Shown piece by piece: positions 33,440-52,478 of a stretch of 64,000 bases of DNA. Position numbers and translations under genes: made by a program. The stretch's first letter is position 1, and each line of letters begins with the position of its first letter. The notes under the pieces were generated by a model. That model was not told where the DNA came from and searched no databases. It saw only the letters and a program-made list of their open reading frames with translations. This DNA comes from Selaginella moellendorffii. Taxonomy: Eukaryota > Plantae > Lycopodiophyta. The stretch is taken from assembly GCF_000143415.4 (NCBI RefSeq), contig NW_003314352.1, forward strand, positions 550,278-614,277. The letters are read 5' to 3'.

Positions 33440-33720
33440 CCCGGGAGAGAAAAGCTGCAATCTCTTCACAAGACGTAAACTCTTGGTTTCTCTCCAGTAC
33501 CATGCTCAAAGCTCCTGCATAGAGTGGAAAGAAAGTGTTCGAAGAGATGCCTACGCACAACCTGGCGTCGTGGAAGTCGATACTAGCTGTGCAGCCGTGT
33601 AGTGTCTATCAAGCAAAGTTTCTGTTCGATGCGATGCCAGAGCAAGACGTTGTCTCCTGCAACTTATATGCTCAGCATGGCCGACTGGACGAAGCTCAGA
33701 GCGTCCCTCTTGCAGATTCA
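33440..33720 (+). pseudogene. PPR gene fragment
   Basis: VFEEMPTHNLASWKSIL, AKFLFDAMPEQDVVSCN and YAQHGRLDEAQ are short, truncated PPR motifs with no full gene around them. Confidence 0.7.
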
Positions 33721-33889
33721 CAATGTTATAGTGGTCATTATAGACAAACCATCTCGTCGAGTCAGTCAGACAGACCTGGTGGAGCGTGGGATCGTGTGGC
33801 TGCGCCCGATGAGCAGCGATTCGAGCCTTGTTCCTGGAGCGCCGAATATTTGTTATAAACAAAATTATAAAGGTAAAAACATTAAAAGA

Positions 33890-35116
33890 TCATCCTTTGA
33901 TCCTCATAACGTGAAGAGCCATCCGGGAGGTTGGAATGACAACGGGCCACTCATCCGCAATGATCTCCCTCTCGGTGTCGCTGTATGCCCGGAGCTGGAG
34001 GAGATCATGCTCGATCATCGAGTCCAGGCCAGGAACATCGGCCAGAGAGTCATACGCGATGACACCGTCGCGGGAGTCGGCCATCTTCTTCACCAAGCGA
34101 GCCCAGTCGTCTTTTTTCCACTTCGGCGGCTCTCGAACACCTACCTTACGCATCCCTTCCGGACGAAATCCCTCCATGACACGGTACGCCGCATCCATGA
34201 ACAGCCGCTTCTTCTCTCGCTCCCAGCGATCCCGGAGACGCTCGCCGGTGGCCACAGCGCGGTGTGCCAGGCGCACGATTCGGTGCAAATTGAGTATAGC
34301 GCCTCCAACGTGAGCGAACACATCATCCCACACAGCTTCGGCTTCCTTCTTGGACGATGCCGGCACGCGCTCCAGCATAAACGCCTTGGCTTCTTCTTCA
34401 GCCAGGTGGCCGACACCGAAGACGCTGACGCCGTGGCCTTGGAATGCAGCCGAGGAGAGCAGCCATCTCCTGAAGAAGCTCTCAGACGAGGCCAGCACAA
34501 TGTGCGCTCCACACTCCTGCTTGGAGATGCGCACAAGGAAGCGGAAGAGCGTCTCCAGCTGGGCTTCTCCATCGGGCAGTGAGTGCCATGCCGCTAACGC
34601 ATTCGCCTCGTCGATGAAGATGGTCGGAAACCCTTGCTTGTATGCATCCACCAAGGTGGTGGAGCACTGCTCCGGCTCCACCAGATGACGTCTCTCCAAG
34701 CAGTATGATTCCAGCCAGCGCATTGTCATGGACAATCCATCCTCACTAGCACTGCCCTTGCAGTGCTCTACGTTGCCTCCCAGGACTTCGATCCCCAGCT
34801 TTACTTTAAGCTCCATGCTATCAACCATGCTACCACGAAGGCTTGCCGCAAAGCCTGCTGGATCTACGTTGGGCTTCTCGCGCATGTCGATGTAGGAAGA
34901 GACCCCCAGAAACTCGCCATGGGCTTGCCGGCGGCGGTACTCCCTGAGCAGCGCCGTCTTACCCGAGTCTTTCGGGCCCGTCATGATCACCATCTGCCCC
35001 GGCTCCGCCAACACCTCCGGCGTCAAAAGGTCGTCAAGATCCGACAGCTCGCGCCTCCTGTTGAAGAAGCTGGCAGCCAGCAGATCCTTCTCCAAGGGAC
35101 GCACTGCTCGCGCCAT
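33890..35116 (-). CDS. Intronless P-loop NTPase, STAND/ATPase_2 (archaeal-type ATPase)-like
   Basis: The 408-aa ORF has FFNRRRELSDL (hhGR/NRxxE), Walker A GPKDSGKT, Walker B TIFIDEAN, a sensor-like IVLASS, VGHLAEEEAKAF and VGGAIL. Confidence 0.85.
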   Translation of the reverse strand: MARAVRPLEKDLLAASFFNRRRELSDLDDLLTPEVLAEPGQMVIMTGPKDSGKTALLREYRRRQAHGEFLGVSSYIDMREKPNVDPAGFAASLRGSMVDSMELKVKLGIEVLGGNVEHCKGSASEDGLSMTMRWLESYCLERRHLVEPEQCSTTLVDAYKQGFPTIFIDEANALAAWHSLPDGEAQLETLFRFLVRISKQECGAHIVLASSESFFRRWLLSSAAFQGHGVSVFGVGHLAEEEAKAFMLERVPASSKKEAEAVWDDVFAHVGGAILNLHRIVRLAHRAVATGERLRDRWEREKKRLFMDAAYRVMEGFRPEGMRKVGVREPPKWKKDDWARLVKKMADSRDGVIAYDSLADVPGLDSMIEHDLLQLRAYSDTEREIIADEWPVVIPTSRMALHVMRIKG

Positions 35117-35153
35117 CTTTAAAATGAAAGAATTTTAGGGCGCAATGGAATTC

Positions 35154-35175
35154 TAGGGTTTATGGTGTAGGGTTT
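35154..35175. promoter_or_regulatory. Two telo-boxes (TAGGGTTT) in the 64-bp divergent spacer
   Basis: TAGGGTTT, the reverse complement of AAACCCTA, occurs at 35154-35161 and 35168-35175. Confidence 0.55.
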
Positions 35176-35180
35176 ATGAA

Positions 35181-37484
35181 ATGGCCGCGACAGCGGCAGC
35201 AAGACGGGCATCCGGATGGCAATGGCGCCGTCCCAATGCCAATGCAGGGCTCCAGGCAGTGGTGGAAGCCAAGGCGATGCCCATGGTCATCACGCGCAGC
35301 TACGCCAAGACCCCGCCCAAGCCCAAGCCCCAGCCCGCCTATCTCTTCGCCAAGAACATGGAAGAGGTGGACTACTGCCCGCGCACCTCCGCCGCCCGGC
35401 TGCGCACCACCAATCTCATCTCCTACCTCTGGATCAGCAGCTACCGCAGCCCCGACAAGACGCACCACAATCTGGAGCGCTTCCTCCACAGCCCCGACCT
35501 CTGGCACTGCGCCTACCAGCGATCCTGCTACAACCGCGGCCTCTGGTCGCCCACCAGCCGGATCGACCAGGAGACCCTGGCCGACCTCGACAACCTCAAG
35601 CGCGCGGTCATGGACGGCACCTTCGCCTGGGGCGGCAAGGAGCAGATCTTCGTCTTCCCGCCGCCCAAGCCCGGCAGCGACCCGCCCCCAGTCCGGCAGC
35701 GCGACGACCCCCGCGGGGATTTCCAGGACGAGATTGTCCAGGAGGTGCTCATCTTCGTGCTGGAGCCGCTGTTCGAGGTGAGGCTCTCGCAGCGCGCGTT
35801 TGGGGGGCGGCCGGGGCGGAGCGCGCAGTCGTGCCTGCGCTACATCCAGGGCAACTTCGACGGCGTGGTGTGGACCGTCAAGGGCGATCTCACCAAGCTC
35901 TACGACGATCCACAGCCGGAGCTCATCACCCGGGTGCTCGCCAACGTCGTCCAGGACTCGAGGGTGATCGAGCTCATCGCCAGCGGCCTCCGGGGGAGGC
36001 TCCGGCTCGAGGTTCCCATCCCGCGGCCGGTGAGAGTCTCGTATCGCCAGCTAAAGCAGCTGAGCGAGGATAAGAAGCCCAAGCGGTGCCCGTTTTGGCT
36101 GGACACCGTGCTCGGCTTCGCTCCGGTCGAGGCGCAAAAGTCGCCCAAGTGGGGATACTGCCACAAGCTCGCGCCTCTCCTCGCCAACATCTACCTCAAC
36201 GAGCTGGATTCGTGGATGGAGGGCCAGATGACCGAGTTCTTCCGCCCCCACGATCCAAACTTGGGCGTGGAGCCGGACGAGTCCCCGCAAGGAGATTATC
36301 TGTGGCAGCACAAGAAGGAGCCGGACAGCAGCGACGACGAGGAGACTTACAGGAACACGCCTTACATCGAGCGGCGGCACTACGAGGATTCCTCGTCGAG
36401 CAGCGACGATGAAGAAGGTGGCGATGGAAAAGGTGGCGGTGGCTCCCCGCCGCCGAATCCCCGGCTGGAGCAGCAGCTGGCGGTGGTGGCCGGGAAGGAG
36501 CTCATGTCGGACAACTCCAAGCGCATGGAGTACATCCGCTACTCGGGGCATTTCCTGATATCGGTGCGCGGCACGCGGCATGACGCGCTGCGCGCCGTGG
36601 AGCGCTGCCGGGCCTTTTGCCGCGAGACCTTCTTCACGGAGCCGGACCTGGACCCGCCGGTGCACATCACCCGCCGGACCTTCTTCCTGGGCCACGAGAT
36701 CTTCCGCCGCCGCCTCATCATTACCCGGCGGCAGCTCTTCTCGGACAACAGGTACCGCACGCTCAAGCTCCACAAGACCATCCTGTGCGTCAAGGCGGAC
36801 ATGCAGTACTGCCTCCACAAGCTCCGCGAGGTCGGGGTGCTCAAAGGTGACGACCACCCGCTGGCGTGCATGAGGCTCTTCCACACCGAGCAGGCGCAGA
36901 CCAACGCACACATGAACAAGCTCCTCCGCGCGCTCTCCGACTGGTACAAGTACGCCTTCAATCGCAAGGCCGTCTGCGGCCTCATCGGCTACGTCTTCCG
37001 ATCGTCGCTGGCGAAGATGTACGCCGCCAAGTACAAGCTCCGCTCGCAGGCGAAGGTTTACAAGACGGCCAGCTCCGACTTGAGCTACCAGCTCAAGGAC
37101 CGCAAGGGCCGGACGCCGCAGTACCGGCAGGCGGTGGTGTCGGGCATGAAGACGGGCATCGAGCCGATCGAGTTCCGGTTCCTGGACCGGATACCCGAGG
37201 CGGTGTTCTCGCCGCTGCCGCGGAACTGGATGCCGGTGCACGAGCGGCTGCTGCGCGAGTTTGCGAGCCTCAAGGAGCCGCAGACCATGGAGGCGGAGCT
37301 GGAGGCGATGCGGGACAAGGAGCCGGCGGCGGTGAGGGAGAGGCTGTCGAGCATCGTGTGGGAGTTTTACCGGGGCGGGACGGCGAGCATGGCCAACTTG
37401 GACGAGGACCTCGCCAAGAAGAAGCTCCGGCATGTCACTCCATACCTCTCGGAGCACGACCATGTCCCTCCTCCACCTCTCTAG
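35181..37484 (+). CDS. nMAT2: Nuclear-encoded group II intron maturase, type I (nMAT1/nMAT2-like), probably mitochondrial
   Basis: RT-like blocks are FQDEIVQEVLIFVLEPLFE, FGGRPGRSAQ, VKGDL and WLDTVLGFAPVEAQKSPKWG...APLLANIYLNELD. The catalytic motif is degenerate (YIRYSGHFLI). Domain X reads DWYKYAFNRK...RSSLAKMYAAKYKLRS. The N-terminus is Arg-rich like a mitochondrial presequence. The family call is firm; nMAT2 versus nMAT1 is tentative. Confidence 0.9.
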   Translation: MAATAAARRASGWQWRRPNANAGLQAVVEAKAMPMVITRSYAKTPPKPKPQPAYLFAKNMEEVDYCPRTSAARLRTTNLISYLWISSYRSPDKTHHNLERFLHSPDLWHCAYQRSCYNRGLWSPTSRIDQETLADLDNLKRAVMDGTFAWGGKEQIFVFPPPKPGSDPPPVRQRDDPRGDFQDEIVQEVLIFVLEPLFEVRLSQRAFGGRPGRSAQSCLRYIQGNFDGVVWTVKGDLTKLYDDPQPELITRVLANVVQDSRVIELIASGLRGRLRLEVPIPRPVRVSYRQLKQLSEDKKPKRCPFWLDTVLGFAPVEAQKSPKWGYCHKLAPLLANIYLNELDSWMEGQMTEFFRPHDPNLGVEPDESPQGDYLWQHKKEPDSSDDEETYRNTPYIERRHYEDSSSSSDDEEGGDGKGGGGSPPPNPRLEQQLAVVAGKELMSDNSKRMEYIRYSGHFLISVRGTRHDALRAVERCRAFCRETFFTEPDLDPPVHITRRTFFLGHEIFRRRLIITRRQLFSDNRYRTLKLHKTILCVKADMQYCLHKLREVGVLKGDDHPLACMRLFHTEQAQTNAHMNKLLRALSDWYKYAFNRKAVCGLIGYVFRSSLAKMYAAKYKLRSQAKVYKTASSDLSYQLKDRKGRTPQYRQAVVSGMKTGIEPIEFRFLDRIPEAVFSPLPRNWMPVHERLLREFASLKEPQTMEAELEAMRDKEPAAVRERLSSIVWEFYRGGTASMANLDEDLAKKKLRHVTPYLSEHDHVPPPPL

Positions 37485-37664
37485 CTTCGTATGCTCGATC
37501 GATCATAGCAAATGTGTACATTTATGCCTTGAAGGACAATTATTTACAAAAAAAAGGAAGAAAAATCAGGTTTTTACGATCTTATCTTTAGAAATAGAAC
37601 TAATATAAGTTGAGGATGGGAAAAATATTTGGGAGAATAAGGGCATGCTATTCTTCTGTTAGCA

Positions 37665-39021
37665 ATGGCGAGTGATAGCAAGTGTGTAGATGTGGAGGCT
37701 TGGGGGCGCAAGCCGGGGGTCTATCTGTACACCTTGAGGAATGGAGGCATCACTGCCAGGATCACGAACTGGGGAGCGACCATCGTCTCGCTCTGCCTCA
37801 GGGATCCTTCAGGTTTGAGAATAATCCTTGGTTTTCTCTCTAGATTTGAATTTTGCAGCTGGAGAGGACATTGATATCGTTCTGGGATTTGATTCCTGCG
37901 ATCCTTACATGGTATCTTCTCTTCTTTGTTGTTTTTTTCGCCCTTCTTCTTCTTCTTCTTCTTCTTAGAGTCGTCGTTTTTCCAGGATGGAACCTCGCCG
38001 TATTTTGGATGCATTGTTGGTCGCGTAGCGAACCGGATCAAAGACGCATCTTTTTCCATGGATGGAGTCACGTACACTCTGCCTGCCAATAACAACATGA
38101 ACACTCTTCATGGTACGCTTGCTCTTTTCTGCCTGGACTTTCCTCACTGTGAAGTTTGTGTGGGACAAAAACAAAAAAACAAAAAAACACCATCCACACT
38201 GCACAGGTGGTGAAGTTGGATATGACAAAGTGCTGTGGCAGTCGCAAATTGTCAAGGAATCTCAGGTCCCAGTGGTCGAATTTACGTACCACAGCAGCGA
38301 TGGCGAGCAAGGTATAGCTTCCTCGCTTTCGACTTCCTGTACAGCTTTAAAGCTTTCTCTTCCTTTTCGTGAAGGATTCCCGGGCGAGCTGGACGTTTCA
38401 GTAACTTATGCTCTTCACGAGAACGAGCTGCGCGTGGAAATGAGAGCTGTGCCGGCGAGCAAGCAAACTCCGGTCAGCCTTGCGCAGCACACGTACTGGA
38501 ACCTGGCGGGGCACAAGAGCGGCAGCATCCTCGACCACACCATTTGCATCTCGGCCTCTCGCTACACTCCAGTGGACGACTTCCAAATTCCCACTGGCGA
38601 GCTCGCCCCCGTCGCAGGCACCGCCTTTGATTTCCTGCAAGAGGCCAGGATCGGTTCCAGGATTGATCAAGTCGAGGGGGGATACGATCACAACTACGTG
38701 CTGGATCAGAAGCAAGGACCTGGGCTTTGCTTTGCTGCCAGGGTGAGAGATCCATCCAGTGGAAGAACGATGGAGCTTCTCACGGACGCGCCGGGCTTGC
38801 AGTTCTACACGGGGAACTTCTTGGTGGCAGAGGCTGGAAAAGATGGAGAGGTTTACAGGAAGCACGCCGGGCTTTGCCTCGAGACGCAGGGATTTCCAAA
38901 TGCCGTGAACGACGCAAGGTTCCCGAGCGTGATGGTTTCCCCCGGGGAAGTTTACAGGCACCAGATGGTGTTTAGATTCTCCGTGACACAAAAGGAAAAA
39001 ACAAAGTGTTTGCTCGAGTGA
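37665..39021 (+). CDS. GALM: Aldose 1-epimerase (galactose mutarotase), multi-exon
   Basis: Motifs are [34 protein letters not shown]|[27 protein letters not shown] and [12 protein letters not shown]. Confidence 0.95.
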
Positions 39022-40225
39022 TTGATAGCAGCTTTCGGCCGACGTAAGATCATGAGCTTTAAATTCTCTGGTCCGAGGATAAAAACACGAGGAACTGGCT
39101 AACAACTTGGCTGCTGCAGTGGAGCATTCAAGGTACTGGGAGGAGAGGATTGATTGATAGTGTCATTCCATCCACACAGCAGATAATAAGTTTACAGAGC
39201 AAGACGATTGATCCTATAACAAACATAGCAACGAACACAGAGAGAGAGAGAGAGATCACAGTGGAATTTATAAAGAATCCATAGCTTAGAGAAAATGTTA
39301 CAGCTTGATCTCAAATTCATGGGTGTCTCTGACCATGCTCTTTTCGTTTTTGGTGTCTTGTGGAGCCATGATGTTTTGCAGTACTTGTCTTTCAAGTTTC
39401 ATGTGGAGGAAATAAGAGATTTTGACAAGACATTCAAAGAGCGAAAGGGGAGACGAGATCCATCCCGCGGGGCCCTAAGTGAGAAGATCAAAGTTTGGAA
39501 ACCAATGCGAGAATTGCTGCTCGCTCGCCTGTTCTCTCACGCTTTGACGAAAGAGTTTAGCAATGGACGGGTGGGGATGCGCTTAAACCCAACGGCTGGG
39601 ATGGAGTCTCGTACGGATGAGATTGAGAAATTAATGAGCCAGCGAGGAAGCGCGTCGGTCTCGTCTGGTGTTTTTTACCAGCATGTACGGTAATAAAGCG
39701 CAGTTTCCCCCCCTAAATTTGGGGGTGCCAATCACTGCCGCCAAATCCACCAACTCGCACTTACGCCCGCCCTCTGGTAAAAAATAAGTGCCCCCATTTC
39801 ACTAAAACAGCTTTTAACCTTGTCCTTTCATCGTCAATGTTTTGAATGTCCGCCATAGCCATCAATCTTTGGGGGCCTGGCTTGGCTTTGCCGCGCGACA
39901 CGGGCGGCGCATCGATCGATCGCTAGCGGCTGGCAGCGAAGCGAGAGGATTCTCCGTGTTTTCTTGCTCGCGGCTGCCAATGGGGGTGGATTCTAGGACA
40001 AAGATGATCCTGCCCAGTCGATGTCTGTGCTGTGCTTGCGAGCGCCAATGCGTGGCGGGCGCAGGCGCTGTTCTTGGCCATGGGTGCACAGCTGGAATCG
40101 CAATTCGAGGTTCGTGATGTGATGTTTCCAGGTATTTCGACTCCCTTGGCGCCGCTGCGCGATCGACGACCCCGGCACTAGCAGCATTGGATGAGGCGGC
40201 GGAGTAGAATCTAGCGCAGGAAGAG

Positions 40226-50690: not shown

Positions 50691-52478
50691 CTATACCATC
50701 GTTGCAGTCATCAGCTGATTGGAGAGCAGCAAGTATGGAGCCACGCCAGTCTCGTCGTCTTTCAGCCCAAAAAACCTCTTTGAAACTCTCTCCCCGCGCT
50801 GGAACTCTCCATGCGTCTCACACCCTCCAAGCACGGCAGTCCACTCCACAGCATTGGGCTCAAACGGCATCAGCTCGACGAGCTCCTCGGCGTCGTTCAA
50901 TCGGCCAGCTCGTCCCAGGAGATCCAGCATGCAGCAGTAGTGATCCCGCGTCGGGAAGCTGCTAAAGTCGGCGGTGATAGAGTGGAAGTGGCTGCGACCA
51001 TCCTCGACCAGTCCAGCATGGCTGCAAGTCGAGATCACGCACAGGAACGTCACAAAGTCGGGGACGATCCCGTCCAAGTTGAGCAGCCAGTAGAGCTCCA
51101 AAACTCTCCTCCCCTGACCCTTTTGAGCGTAGGACGAGATCATCGCGTTCCAAGTCTCGATCGTCTTCCTCGCCGCCATCTCGTCGAAGATCTCTCTCGC
51201 CTCCGCCAGCTTCCCGCATTTTCCATAGAGGTTGAGCAGCGCGGTCTTGACGATCGCGCACTCACCCAGCTCCTCCACGCCTTGGACGATCCAGTGCACA
51301 GTTCTTCCCTCGTCGAGCCTCGTGAGGTTCGCGCAGGCGTCGAGAACCGTGACGCACGAGATCTTGTCCGCAGTCACTCCTTCCACATCCATCTCGCGGA
51401 AAACTTCGATCGCGAGAGAGTACTCGGCGCTCTGGATCATCGCTCCCATCATCGCATTCCACGACACGAGTGACCTCCCCGGCATCCGCTGGAAAAATCT
51501 CTCGGCCTCGGGGAGCTCTCCATTGGATCCACACGCCACGATCATGCTCGTCCAGCAGACGTGATCCCTGGCGCTGGAAAGCCCGTGGAAGAGCTCCCTC
51601 GCTCGATCGATCTCGCCATTTTCAGCGAAGGCCGCGATCATCGAGGTGTGGAGAATCACATCACCGCCGGAGCTCACCGAGTCATACACCTCCTTGGCGC
51701 TCGCGGTGGATCCAAACTTTCCATACATACTCACGAGCGAGGTAGCGACGAGAACATCCGCGGCCAGGCAAGCGGTAGCGGCGCGCGAGTGAAGATCTTT
51801 GCCGAGCTCCACCGCCAGCGCGGAGGCGCAGGCATCGATGCACGACACGAATGTGATGTGATCCGGCGGCACGTCCATCCGCCGGAACAACGCGATCGCC
51901 TCCGCCGCACGGCCCGCCCGGACGAGCGCGGTGATTATCGTGTTCCAGGATACCACGTCGCGGCGCGGCATCTCCTGGAACAGCGCCTTCGCGTCGTCAA
52001 GATACCCGGTCTGGGCAAATGCTGTAACAATGATGTTCCAGGAGATGCTGTTCTTCCGGATCTCCGGCATCCGGTGGAAGATCGCGCGCACCTCGGCAAG
52101 ATCTCCACCTTGCGCGTAGGCGAGCATCAGCAAGTGCCAGGAGACCGAATTGGGCTCCGCGATGGAGTCGAAGACGCACCGAGCGGATGCCGTGCTGCCG
52201 CAATTGCCATACATCTGGACGAGGAGATTCTGGAGGAAGATGTCGCGCTCCAATCCGGTGTTGACGATGTGCCGGTGGATTCTCCTCCCCTGATCCAGGG
52301 CCTGGCGACTGCCGCATTGGCGGAGGAGCGATGCAAACGTGTTCTTGTCCGCGGTCTCGCTGCGATCCAGGAGACCGAGGCTCGCGGTGAGATGATCCTG
52401 GTGCTTCTTGCCGCCGCTGGAAACGATCCTGGGAGGGATTCTTGCTGCTTGGAAGCGAAACCTTGTCCATTGCTTCAT
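50691..52478 (-). CDS. PLS-class PPR protein with E domain (no DYW), intronless
   Basis: The 595-aa ORF has NLLVQMYGNCG, xSWNxxxxAFAQ repeats, CSHAGLV, HYCCMLDLLGRAG and MPFEPNAVEW. Confidence 0.95.
   Translation of the reverse strand: MKQWTRFRFQAARIPPRIVSSGGKKHQDHLTASLGLLDRSETADKNTFASLLRQCGSRQALDQGRRIHRHIVNTGLERDIFLQNLLVQMYGNCGSTASARCVFDSIAEPNSVSWHLLMLAYAQGGDLAEVRAIFHRMPEIRKNSISWNIIVTAFAQTGYLDDAKALFQEMPRRDVVSWNTIITALVRAGRAAEAIALFRRMDVPPDHITFVSCIDACASALAVELGKDLHSRAATACLAADVLVATSLVSMYGKFGSTASAKEVYDSVSSGGDVILHTSMIAAFAENGEIDRARELFHGLSSARDHVCWTSMIVACGSNGELPEAERFFQRMPGRSLVSWNAMMGAMIQSAEYSLAIEVFREMDVEGVTADKISCVTVLDACANLTRLDEGRTVHWIVQGVEELGECAIVKTALLNLYGKCGKLAEAREIFDEMAARKTIETWNAMISSYAQKGQGRRVLELYWLLNLDGIVPDFVTFLCVISTCSHAGLVEDGRSHFHSITADFSSFPTRDHYCCMLDLLGRAGRLNDAEELVELMPFEPNAVEWTAVLGGCETHGEFQRGERVSKRFFGLKDDETGVAPYLLLSNQLMTATMV

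What the first reader, a model, noticed from the sequence alone, without database searches (positions are those of the whole stretch)
33890..37484. Standalone intronless STAND/ATPase_2-like NTPase fused head-to-head (64 bp) with a nuclear intron maturase
Seen in sequence: a single-exon 408-aa NTPase with hhNRxxE, Walker A GPKDSGKT, Walker B IFIDEAN and a GG motif, but no TIR/CC, LRR, TPR or WD40 partner domain. Its ATG is 64 bp from the maturase ATG, with two telo-boxes in between. Established knowledge: plant STAND NTPases are usually NB-ARC NLRs, whereas the ATPase_2 type is best known from prokaryotes and some fungi/protists. Inference: this may be a horizontally acquired or lineage-restricted ATPase that captured the maturase promoter. 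It could be co-expressed with the maturase, or even act with it in organellar intron splicing, or be an uncharacterised immune-type NTPase.
Basis: partly seen in the sequence, partly recalled or inferred. Interest (0 to 1): 0.72.

Follow-up and report, generated by a model that had tools for sequence, protein, structure and literature searches.

The report
Known spikemoss ATPase beside intron maturase
A small stand-alone ATPase gene sits back-to-back with a mitochondrial intron-splicing gene in the spikemoss Selaginella, but the ATPase belongs to an already described family scattered through this genome and the pairing looks like an accident of tight gene packing.

Summary
In this Selaginella moellendorffii window, a 408-aa intronless ORF (33890-35116, minus) passes Pfam's ATPase_2 threshold and has the quoted motifs. 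It has no partner domain. Its ATG lies 64 bp from the ATG of a 767-aa type-I nuclear intron maturase (35181-37484, plus), with two telo-boxes between. These are two divergent genes, not a fusion.

The functional reading does not hold.
- The ATPase folds like the solved archaeal ATPase_2 proteins 2qen and 2fna (NTPase, lid, winged helix).
- It sits in a Selaginella-only paralogue clade, inside a fern and green-alga clade. Recent transfer into Selaginella is excluded.
- Armaleo et al. 2019 already report seven "archaeal ATPases" in Selaginella.
- Four ATPase paralogue loci and one maturase paralogue locus lack the pairing. Only the allelic copy keeps it.
- In four spliced RNA assemblies the maturase is well covered. 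The ATPase gives three low-depth scraps in two runs.
- The ATPase has no room for a presequence, and its allelic dN/dS is 0.64 against 0.15 for the maturase.
- Telo-boxes are common in the window (13 against 1.7 expected), and CDS gaps under 100 bp are frequent in this genome.

Earlier notes from this scan describe other members of the family in the same genome.

Verdict: a known family in an incidental head-to-head pair. Low interest.

The parts
33890..35116 (-). Intronless CDS of a 408-aa ATPase_2 ('archaeal-type') P-loop NTPase: NTPase domain, helical lid and C-terminal winged helix. It is the allele of SELMODRAFT_405930.
   Evidence: ORF; Pfam PF01637 at 48.2 bits against a cutoff of 33.2; 98% identity to P0001; AlphaFold model with pLDDT 86 and pTM 0.85; best PDB matches 2qen and 2fna.
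35048..35068 (-). N-terminal FFNRRRE motif (residues 17-23). R20 and E23 are invariant in the family. The database gene model, which starts at M42, lacks this motif.
   Evidence: The motif is kept in both alleles and in L007.
34955..34978 (-). Walker A motif GPKDSGKT (residues 47-54).
   Evidence: G47, P48, G52 and K53 are invariant.
34601..34621 (-). Walker B motif IFIDEAN (residues 166-172).
   Evidence: D169 and A171 are invariant.
34301..34306 (-). GG motif (residues 271-272) in the helical lid, invariant across the family.
35117..35180 (.). 64-bp divergent spacer between the two ATGs, carrying telo-boxes (TAGGGTTT) at 35154-35161 and 35168-35175. It differs by one SNP in the allelic copy.
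35181..37484 (+). Intronless CDS of a 767-aa type-I nuclear intron maturase (nMAT1/2 clade). It has a degenerate RT region, domain X and no En domain hit, and its N-terminus is Ala/Arg-rich and looks like a presequence.
   Evidence: ORF; Pfam and NCBIfam; 99% identity to P0155, which NCBI names 'nuclear intron maturase 2, mitochondrial-like', and 35% to angiosperm nMAT1; N-terminal composition.
36540..36551 (+). YSGH (residues 454-457), read as the RT block-5 position where active RTs have YADD. This implies a catalytically dead RT.
   Evidence: local context IRYSGHFLI. Assigning it to the YADD position is my own reading from knowledge of group II intron RTs; it was not aligned here.
36783..37067 (+). 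Domain X (maturase domain), residues 535-629.
   Evidence: Pfam PF01348, E = 4.8e-10.
35172..37505 (+). Extent of the maturase RNA contigs. Near-full-length contigs in X1 and X5, shorter contigs over most of the gene in X6 and X7; the leftmost contig ends at 35165-35175 in each run.
   Evidence: table 8. Contig ends are only suggestive of a transcript start.

Best explanation
The locus holds two independent nuclear genes of Selaginella moellendorffii that happen to lie head-to-head in a gene-dense genome. The 408-aa protein is one paralogue of the already described eukaryotic 'archaeal-type ATPase' family (Pfam ATPase_2). It is a minimal nucleotide-switch module: a P-loop NTPase domain with intact Walker A and B motifs, a helical lid with the invariant GG motif, and a C-terminal winged helix. 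This is the same three-part layout as PABY2304, SSO1545 and Orc1/Cdc6. By inference it binds and hydrolyses ATP, and uses the winged helix and lid for nucleotide-dependent binding of a partner or nucleic acid, or for self-association. It has no presequence, so it most likely acts in the cytosol or nucleus. It arose by duplication within the Selaginella lineage from a gene inherited vertically in the green lineage. The neighbour is a type-I nMAT, a mitochondrial group II intron splicing factor with a dead RT. The two genes share a 64-bp telo-box-bearing spacer that must contain or abut both core promoters. Their RNA output is very unequal and the arrangement is not conserved beyond the allele, so the pairing has no demonstrated functional meaning. 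Shown: gene structures, family membership, fold, phylogenetic placement, lack of the pairing at paralogues, and RNA coverage. Inferred: ATPase activity, localisation and promoter sharing.
For: Family and fold: Pfam ATPase_2 above its gathering score. A confident model has as its two best PDB matches the solved ATPase_2 proteins 2qen and 2fna, followed by Orc1/Cdc6. All 14 family-invariant residues are present. Phylogeny: the window copy groups with Smoe413500, inside a Selaginella-only clade (100/99), inside a clade with Adiantum (98/96), which groups with chlorophyte and Chlorokybus sequences (100/99). Literature: Selaginella has 7 'archaeal ATPases' (PMC6652019), and Selaginella has 8 nuclear maturases, four of them type-I (PMC3927076). 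No conserved link: the ATPase paralogue loci L002, L003, L004 and L006 have no maturase; the maturase paralogue locus L005 has no ATPase; the fern gene has no called neighbour within 10 kb. Only the allelic copy L001 keeps the pair. Expression: the four runs are shown to be RNA because they splice out three GT..AG introns of the neighbouring aldose epimerase. The maturase has near-full contigs in two runs and most of its length covered in the other two (depth 3-55), while the ATPase has three fragments at depth 2.6-5.5 in two runs and none in the other two. Constraint: allelic dN/dS is 0.64 for the ATPase and 0.15 for the maturase. Context: telo-boxes number 13 against 1.72 expected in the window. 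Seven of 29 adjacent CDS gaps in six Selaginella loci are under 100 bp, including another head-to-head pair at 79 bp.
Against: A 64-bp ATG-to-ATG spacing forces the two promoters to overlap physically, so some shared regulation is hard to avoid. Many homologues carry N-terminal extensions that look like organelle presequences, so the wider family may be organellar, which would fit a link to a mitochondrial splicing factor. Contig depth is a poor measure of expression, and the runs were chosen by a query dominated by the maturase. Synteny in other lycophyte genomes could not be examined. The dN/dS values rest on only 17 and 21 substitutions.
Confidence: 0.8

Rival explanations
1. Functional coupling: the ATPase and the maturase are co-regulated from one bidirectional telo-box promoter and act together, for example the ATPase acting as a cofactor in mitochondrial group II intron splicing.
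For: The 64-bp spacer with two telo-boxes is nearly identical in both alleles. Many family members have presequence-like N-terminal extensions. Another paralogue lies 55 bp from a PPR-E gene.
Against: This copy has only 16 residues before the conserved domain, with 8 acidic residues in its first 40 and an upstream in-frame stop, so there is no presequence. RNA coverage is very unequal. The pairing is absent at every paralogue locus examined, on both the ATPase and the maturase side. Telo-boxes are common in the window. PPR genes are abundant here, with two in this window alone.
Confidence: 0.05
2. Recent horizontal acquisition by Selaginella from a prokaryote or fungus.
For: The gene is intronless. 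The Pfam family is mostly archaeal. The distribution across eukaryotes is patchy, and the literature favours HGT at some depth.
Against: The nearest relatives are Selaginella paralogues at 34-41% identity, then a fern, then green algae, with strong support. Some paralogues and the fern gene have introns. GC content (0.62) matches neighbouring genes. Any transfer must be ancient, pre-dating vascular plants.
Confidence: 0.03
3. An uncharacterised immune or surveillance-type minimal STAND NTPase: a NOD module without a sensor that works with partners supplied in trans.
For: It has a STAND-like N-terminal motif and a GG motif. NLR and Apaf-type NOD modules appear among the lower-ranked fold matches. 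There is a lineage-specific expansion with tandem duplicates. Constraint is relaxed. An earlier scan note reports a satellite of truncated copies elsewhere in the genome.
Against: There is no sensor or effector domain. PADLOC gives no credible hit (best E = 0.012, 12 bits). The best fold matches are ATPase_2 and Orc1/Cdc6, not NLRs. No induction or genetic data exist.
Confidence: 0.08
4. A decaying paralogue: the gene is barely transcribed and drifting towards a pseudogene, so it has no function at this locus.
For: Only low-depth RNA scraps were found. Allelic dN/dS is 0.64. The closest homologue from another sample, L007, carries an in-frame stop.
Against: The ORF is intact in both alleles and keeps all family-invariant residues. 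The model is confident. The dN/dS rests on about 17 substitutions and does not differ clearly from moderate constraint.
Confidence: 0.12

Closest known systems
Eukaryotic 'archaeal ATPase' family (Pfam ATPase_2, formerly Arch_ATPase) described in Galdieria, Asterochloris, Coccomyxa, Klebsormidium, Selaginella (7 members), Rhizophagus and Puccinia (Armaleo et al. 2019, PMC6652019; Schonknecht et al. 2013 as cited there)
   Same: Same Pfam family and same organism. The taxa recovered here match the published list (Coccomyxa, Rhizophagus, Selaginella paralogues). The gene is almost certainly one of the seven published members.
   Different: This work adds a fern (Adiantum), Chlorokybus, Cyanophora, further chlorophytes and two chlamydial MAGs. 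It also shows that the green-lineage members form one clade, which argues for vertical descent within plants. The published thermotolerance and desiccation role is speculation and was not tested here.
Archaeal ATPase_2 proteins of solved structure: P. abyssi PABY2304 (PDB 2qen) and S. solfataricus SSO1545 (PDB 2fna)
   Same: They are the best structural matches over the full length (E = 9e-10 and 1.5e-8; TM by target 0.63 and 0.53), with the same NTPase, lid and winged-helix layout.
   Different: Sequence identity is only 12-14%. The plant protein has a longer insert between Walker A and Walker B, where model confidence is low (residues about 100-160). The function of the archaeal proteins is also unknown.
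Orc1/Cdc6 AAA+ initiators
   Same: Same three-domain architecture, and next-best fold matches.
   Different: No sequence-level match. RMSD is high (10-16 A). There is no evidence for DNA binding or a replication role.
Plant NB-ARC NLRs and other STAND NTPases
   Same: A P-loop NOD-like core with an N-terminal h-h-N/G-R-x-x-E type motif and a lid motif. NLR NOD modules appear among the lower-ranked fold hits.
   Different: No NB-ARC Pfam hit and no TIR, CC or LRR domain. It is a bare module.
Type-I nuclear maturases nMAT1/nMAT2 of angiosperms, and the Selaginella nMATs of Guo and Mower 2013 (via PMC3927076)
   Same: Domain X, a degenerate RT, no En domain hit, intronless, and 35% identity to angiosperm nMAT1.
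   Different: It has a long acidic, Ser- and Gly-rich insert between the RT-like region and domain X (read). No published link to an ATPase_2 neighbour turned up in the few full-text searches run.

Membership tests
Pfam ATPase_2 (PF01637, 'archaeal ATPase') | Whole-protein score above Pfam's gathering threshold | tested here: met
   48.2 bits against 33.2, residues 17-264 on profile positions 1-213 of 225.
Pfam ATPase_2 (PF01637, 'archaeal ATPase') | Intact Walker A (GxxxxGKT/S) and Walker B (hhhhDE) | tested here: met
   GPKDSGKT at residue 47 and IFIDEAN at 166; invariant in the family alignment.
Pfam ATPase_2 (PF01637, 'archaeal ATPase') | Fold of the solved members: NTPase, helical lid and C-terminal winged helix | tested here: met
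   Model with pLDDT 86; the top two PDB matches are 2qen and 2fna, aligned over the full length.
Pfam ATPase_2 (PF01637, 'archaeal ATPase') | ATP binding and hydrolysis | not testable with these tools
   Needs a biochemical assay.
STAND NTPases (criteria of Leipe, Koonin and Aravind 2004, recalled from memory) | N-terminal hhGRExE-type motif before the P-loop, plus a GxP-type motif in the helical domain | tested here: inconclusive
   FFNRxxE is present, with R and E invariant. The lid has an invariant GG but no conserved proline.
STAND NTPases (criteria of Leipe, Koonin and Aravind 2004, recalled from memory) | Fusion to effector and/or sensor repeat domains | tested here: not met
   No further Pfam domain. 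The model is fully accounted for by three domains.
Plant NB-ARC NLR | NB-ARC domain with TIR, CC or LRR | tested here: not met
   No NB-ARC, TIR or LRR hit at E up to 1.
Known anti-phage defence system proteins (PADLOC) | A significant match to a defence-system model | tested here: not met
   Best match PDC-S01, E = 0.012, 12.4 bits, P-loop region only.
Type-I nuclear intron maturase (nMAT1/2 clade) | Domain X plus an RT-derived region, without a D/En domain | tested here: met
   PF01348 at 40 bits; TIGR04416 at E = 1.5e-15 and RVT_1 at E = 0.077, both well below their curated cutoffs; no endonuclease hit. Best named relatives are nMAT1 and nMAT2.
Type-I nuclear intron maturase (nMAT1/2 clade) | Mitochondrial import and a splicing role | not testable with these tools
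   Only the composition of the first 40 residues is available (11 Ala, 6 Arg/Lys, 1 acidic). No targeting predictor was on hand.
Functionally coupled bidirectional gene pair | Head-to-head arrangement with start sites under 1 kb apart | tested here: met
   64 bp from ATG to ATG.
Functionally coupled bidirectional gene pair | Correlated expression | tested here: inconclusive
   Contig coverage is very unequal in four RNA assemblies, but contigs cannot measure expression levels or correlation.
Functionally coupled bidirectional gene pair | Arrangement conserved in paralogues or orthologues | tested here: not met
   Present only in the allelic copy. Absent at four ATPase paralogue loci, one maturase paralogue locus and the fern locus. 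Other lycophyte genomes could not be examined.

The most novel reading that the evidence does not exclude
The green-lineage ATPase_2 family, most of whose members carry presequence-like N-termini, is an organelle-associated nucleic-acid-handling NTPase. On this reading, the telo-box spacer co-regulates this copy with a mitochondrial maturase as part of a mitochondrial-biogenesis regulon, which would reveal a new ATP-dependent cofactor of plant group II intron splicing.
Probability: 0.04. Interest if true: 0.6.

Novelty: already known. Interest (0 to 1): 0.15.

Why it matters
As it stands it matters little. The gene is already in the databases (SELMODRAFT_405930). The seven-member Selaginella 'archaeal ATPase' family is published, and so are the Selaginella nuclear maturases. 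Three things here are useful. First, a corrected start codon restores the conserved N-terminal motif. Second, the green-plant members (alga, lycophyte, fern) form one clade, which favours vertical descent with losses over repeated transfers. Third, the maturase adjacency is shown to be incidental. The function of eukaryotic ATPase_2 proteins is still unknown, and that is the real open question.

Tried and rejected
1. The word-index homology searches with the single protein and with the 18-sequence profile returned only 2-3 proteins, because P-loop words swamp the index. The exhaustive HMMER search was needed.
2. The search for related loci on prokaryote genomes with the alignment failed, because no stretch was conserved enough. 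Archaeal and bacterial outgroups were therefore not added, and the tree is rooted at the midpoint only.
3. The 715-aa gene 55 bp upstream of paralogue P0005 was tested as a possible cryptic maturase. It is a PPR-E protein.
4. Retrocopy origin: there is no poly(A) remnant or other signature 3' of the stop, and several paralogues are also intronless. This is not supported, though not excluded.
5. The PPR-like remnant ORF 33535-33858 gets only E = 0.24 in Pfam and is not supported.
6. Direct sequence search of the PDB gave nothing.
7. Complex prediction was not run. The two proteins together (1175 residues) exceed the limit, I do not claim that they bind, and adjacency alone is not reason enough.
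8. Absence from seed plants and bryophytes is not proven. The statement rests on those hits plus the taxon list in PMC6652019.
Full report
**Organism and observation.** The window is nuclear DNA of the lycophyte Selaginella moellendorffii. The 408-aa ORF is 98% identical to SELMODRAFT_405930, and the 767-aa ORF is 99% identical to a protein that NCBI names 'nuclear intron maturase 2, mitochondrial-like'. The motifs FFNRRRE (residue 17), GPKDSGKT (47), IFIDEAN (166) and GG (271-272) are present. The spacer is 64 bp and carries TAGGGTTT at 35154 and 35168. Pfam places the small protein in ATPase_2 (PF01637) at 48.2 bits, above the gathering score of 33.2, and finds no TIR, CC, LRR, TPR, WD40 or NB-ARC domain. 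The large protein has domain X and weak RT matches.

**Gene model.** The database model starts at my residue 42 and so lacks the FFNRxxE motif. Both alleles keep an open frame from M1 (the second allele has a two-codon indel near the start). The closest foreign homologue, L007, also has the motif. An in-frame TAA lies seven codons upstream of M1 (read). M1 at 35116 is therefore the best start, and only 16 residues precede the conserved domain.

**What the ATPase is.** An 18-sequence alignment shows conservation along the whole length, with 14 invariant positions that include both Walker motifs and the GG motif. AlphaFold2 on that alignment gives a confident model (pLDDT 86, pTM 0.85). Its two best PDB matches are the solved ATPase_2 proteins PABY2304 (2qen) and SSO1545 (2fna). 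Orc1/Cdc6 proteins follow, and NLR and Apaf-type NOD modules come further down. The protein is thus a bare three-domain nucleotide switch: P-loop NTPase, helical lid and winged helix. PADLOC gives no credible defence-system match.

**Distribution and origin.**
- An exhaustive phmmer search of 1.84 billion representatives found only 239 proteins at E up to 1e-3.
- The named hits are Selaginella paralogues at 34-41% identity (413500/432191, the tandem pair 409440 and 440391, 425160/424095, 413311, 415937/406758), the fern Adiantum, the green algae Coccomyxa, Nannochloris, Myrmecia and Tetradesmus, the streptophyte alga Chlorokybus, the glaucophyte Cyanophora, the fungus Rhizophagus, and two chlamydial MAGs.
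- In a maximum-likelihood tree, the window's protein pairs with Smoe413500 inside a Selaginella-only clade (100/99). That clade lies inside a vascular-plant clade with Adiantum (98/96), which groups with the green-algal sequences (100/99).
- This is the signature of vertical descent in the green lineage followed by duplication in Selaginella. It rules out a recent transfer into Selaginella.
- The literature already covers this family. Armaleo et al. 2019 list Selaginella (7 members) among the eukaryotes with 'archaeal ATPases' and leave open whether there were several transfers or one ancient transfer followed by losses (PMC6652019).
- The HGT origin claimed for Galdieria has since been questioned (PMC6629376).

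**The maturase.** It belongs to the type-I nMAT clade. Its best named relatives are angiosperm nMAT1 at 35% identity, and a Selaginella paralogue, P0156, at 40%. Where I would expect the RT YADD motif it reads YSGH, so the RT is probably inactive. Its N-terminus is Ala/Arg-rich, with one acidic residue in the first 40. According to the review PMC3927076, Guo and Mower found eight nuclear maturases in Selaginella, four of them from the type-I lineage.

**Is the pairing meaningful?**
- The allelic copy on GL377569.1 keeps the pair, the same neighbours, and a spacer that differs by one SNP.
- Nothing else keeps it. Paralogue loci L002, L003 (a tandem pair), L004 and L006 have no maturase by gene calls or by tblastn.
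- The maturase paralogue locus L005 has no ATPase.
- The fern homologue has no called neighbour within 10 kb.
- Some paralogues and the fern gene have introns, while three paralogues are intronless like this one. Being intronless is therefore not special here.
- Telo-boxes are strongly enriched across the whole window: 13 against 1.72 expected, and no shuffle out of 100 reached 13. Their presence in the spacer is the norm for promoters here.
- In the six Selaginella loci fetched, 7 of 29 gaps between adjacent coding regions are under 100 bp, including another head-to-head pair at 79 bp.

**Expression.**
- Four runs from four studies are shown to be RNA, because their contigs splice out three GT..AG introns of the neighbouring aldose epimerase.
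- The maturase has near-full contigs in X1 and X5 and most of its length covered in X6 and X7, at depths of 3-55. The leftmost contig ends at 35165-35175 in each run, right at the second telo-box.
- The ATPase gives one 206-nt fragment in one run and two fragments in another, at depth 2.6-5.5, and nothing in the other two runs.
- Contig depth is a poor measure, but tight co-expression is not what is seen.
- Between the alleles, dN/dS is 0.64 for the ATPase and 0.15 for the maturase, from small counts.

**Localisation argument.** Many homologues have N-terminal extensions of 40-130 residues that look like presequences. This copy has none, and it has 8 acidic residues in its first 40. That speaks against a role inside mitochondria alongside the maturase. 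This is sequence reading only; no targeting predictor was available.

**Earlier scan notes.** Two notes on other pieces of this genome describe further members of the family: an intronless ATPase_2 gene with a presequence (s1-431196), and a silent satellite built from truncated copies (s1-422230). I did not test them. They fit the picture of a dispersed family.

**Verdict.** The classification as a stand-alone, STAND-like ATPase_2 is right. The family is already published for this species. Recent HGT is excluded. Interest is low. The remaining open question is the function of eukaryotic ATPase_2 proteins in general.

Noticed in passing
window 34994-35116 (-); L001 7872-8000: The public gene model of SELMODRAFT_405930 starts at Met42 and omits the conserved FFNRxxE motif. 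Both alleles keep an open frame from an upstream ATG, so the annotated protein is N-terminally truncated by 41 residues.
   Followed up: yes
L008 2333-3808 (Chlamydiales MAG contig JBIOJV010000067.1); also P0104 (Anoxychlamydiales MAG): Two chlamydial MAGs encode members of this otherwise eukaryotic clade, grouping in a 99/95 clade with an unnamed protein. The contig looks truly bacterial: compact genes, ribosomal protein L28, a TnpB-like gene and a lipoamide dehydrogenase-type gene. The chlamydial protein has a roughly 79-residue N-terminal extension aligned with the presequence-like region of eukaryotic homologues. This is a candidate host-chlamydia gene transfer.
   Followed up: partly
window 2807, 18086, 18141, 29830, 30628, 47920, 48013, 52496, 54422, 54434, 59888: Telo-boxes (AAACCCTA) are 7.5-fold enriched across the window (13 against 1.72 expected) and often occur in close pairs. 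One lies 18 bp upstream of the ATG of the PPR gene at 50691-52478 (-).
   Followed up: partly
L007 1-1428 (Logan contig of SRR15179106): The closest homologue outside S. moellendorffii (47% identity over residues 8-404, uninterrupted by introns) carries one in-frame stop after about residue 111. It may be a pseudogene, an allele or an assembly error. The organism is unknown.
   Followed up: partly
L004 5798-9308: Paralogue SELMODRAFT_425160 lies 55 bp downstream of, and on the same strand as, a 715-aa PPR-E gene for which the stored annotation has no Pfam hit. That PPR gene is itself head-to-head with a transporter gene, 79 bp away.
   Followed up: partly
L005 8001-14249: The locus of the maturase paralogue P0156 contains a second, shorter maturase copy (393 aa) and two Dabb-domain genes in opposite orientation. 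This suggests a local inverted duplication.
   Followed up: no
window 36300-36480 (+): The maturase carries a long acidic, Ser- and Gly-rich low-complexity insert (about residues 375-430) between the RT-like region and domain X, and reads YSGH where I expect YADD.
   Followed up: partly
window 37637-39200 (+): RNA contigs confirm three short GT..AG introns of the aldose 1-epimerase gene (37810-37855, 38112-38205, 38309-38371). This gene has much higher contig depth than either gene of the pair.
   Followed up: partly
window 33535-33858 (+): An ORF just 3' of the ATPase has PPR-like wording (FEEMP..., FDAMPEQDVVS...), but Pfam gives only E = 0.24. It may be a decayed PPR fragment or chance.
   Followed up: partly
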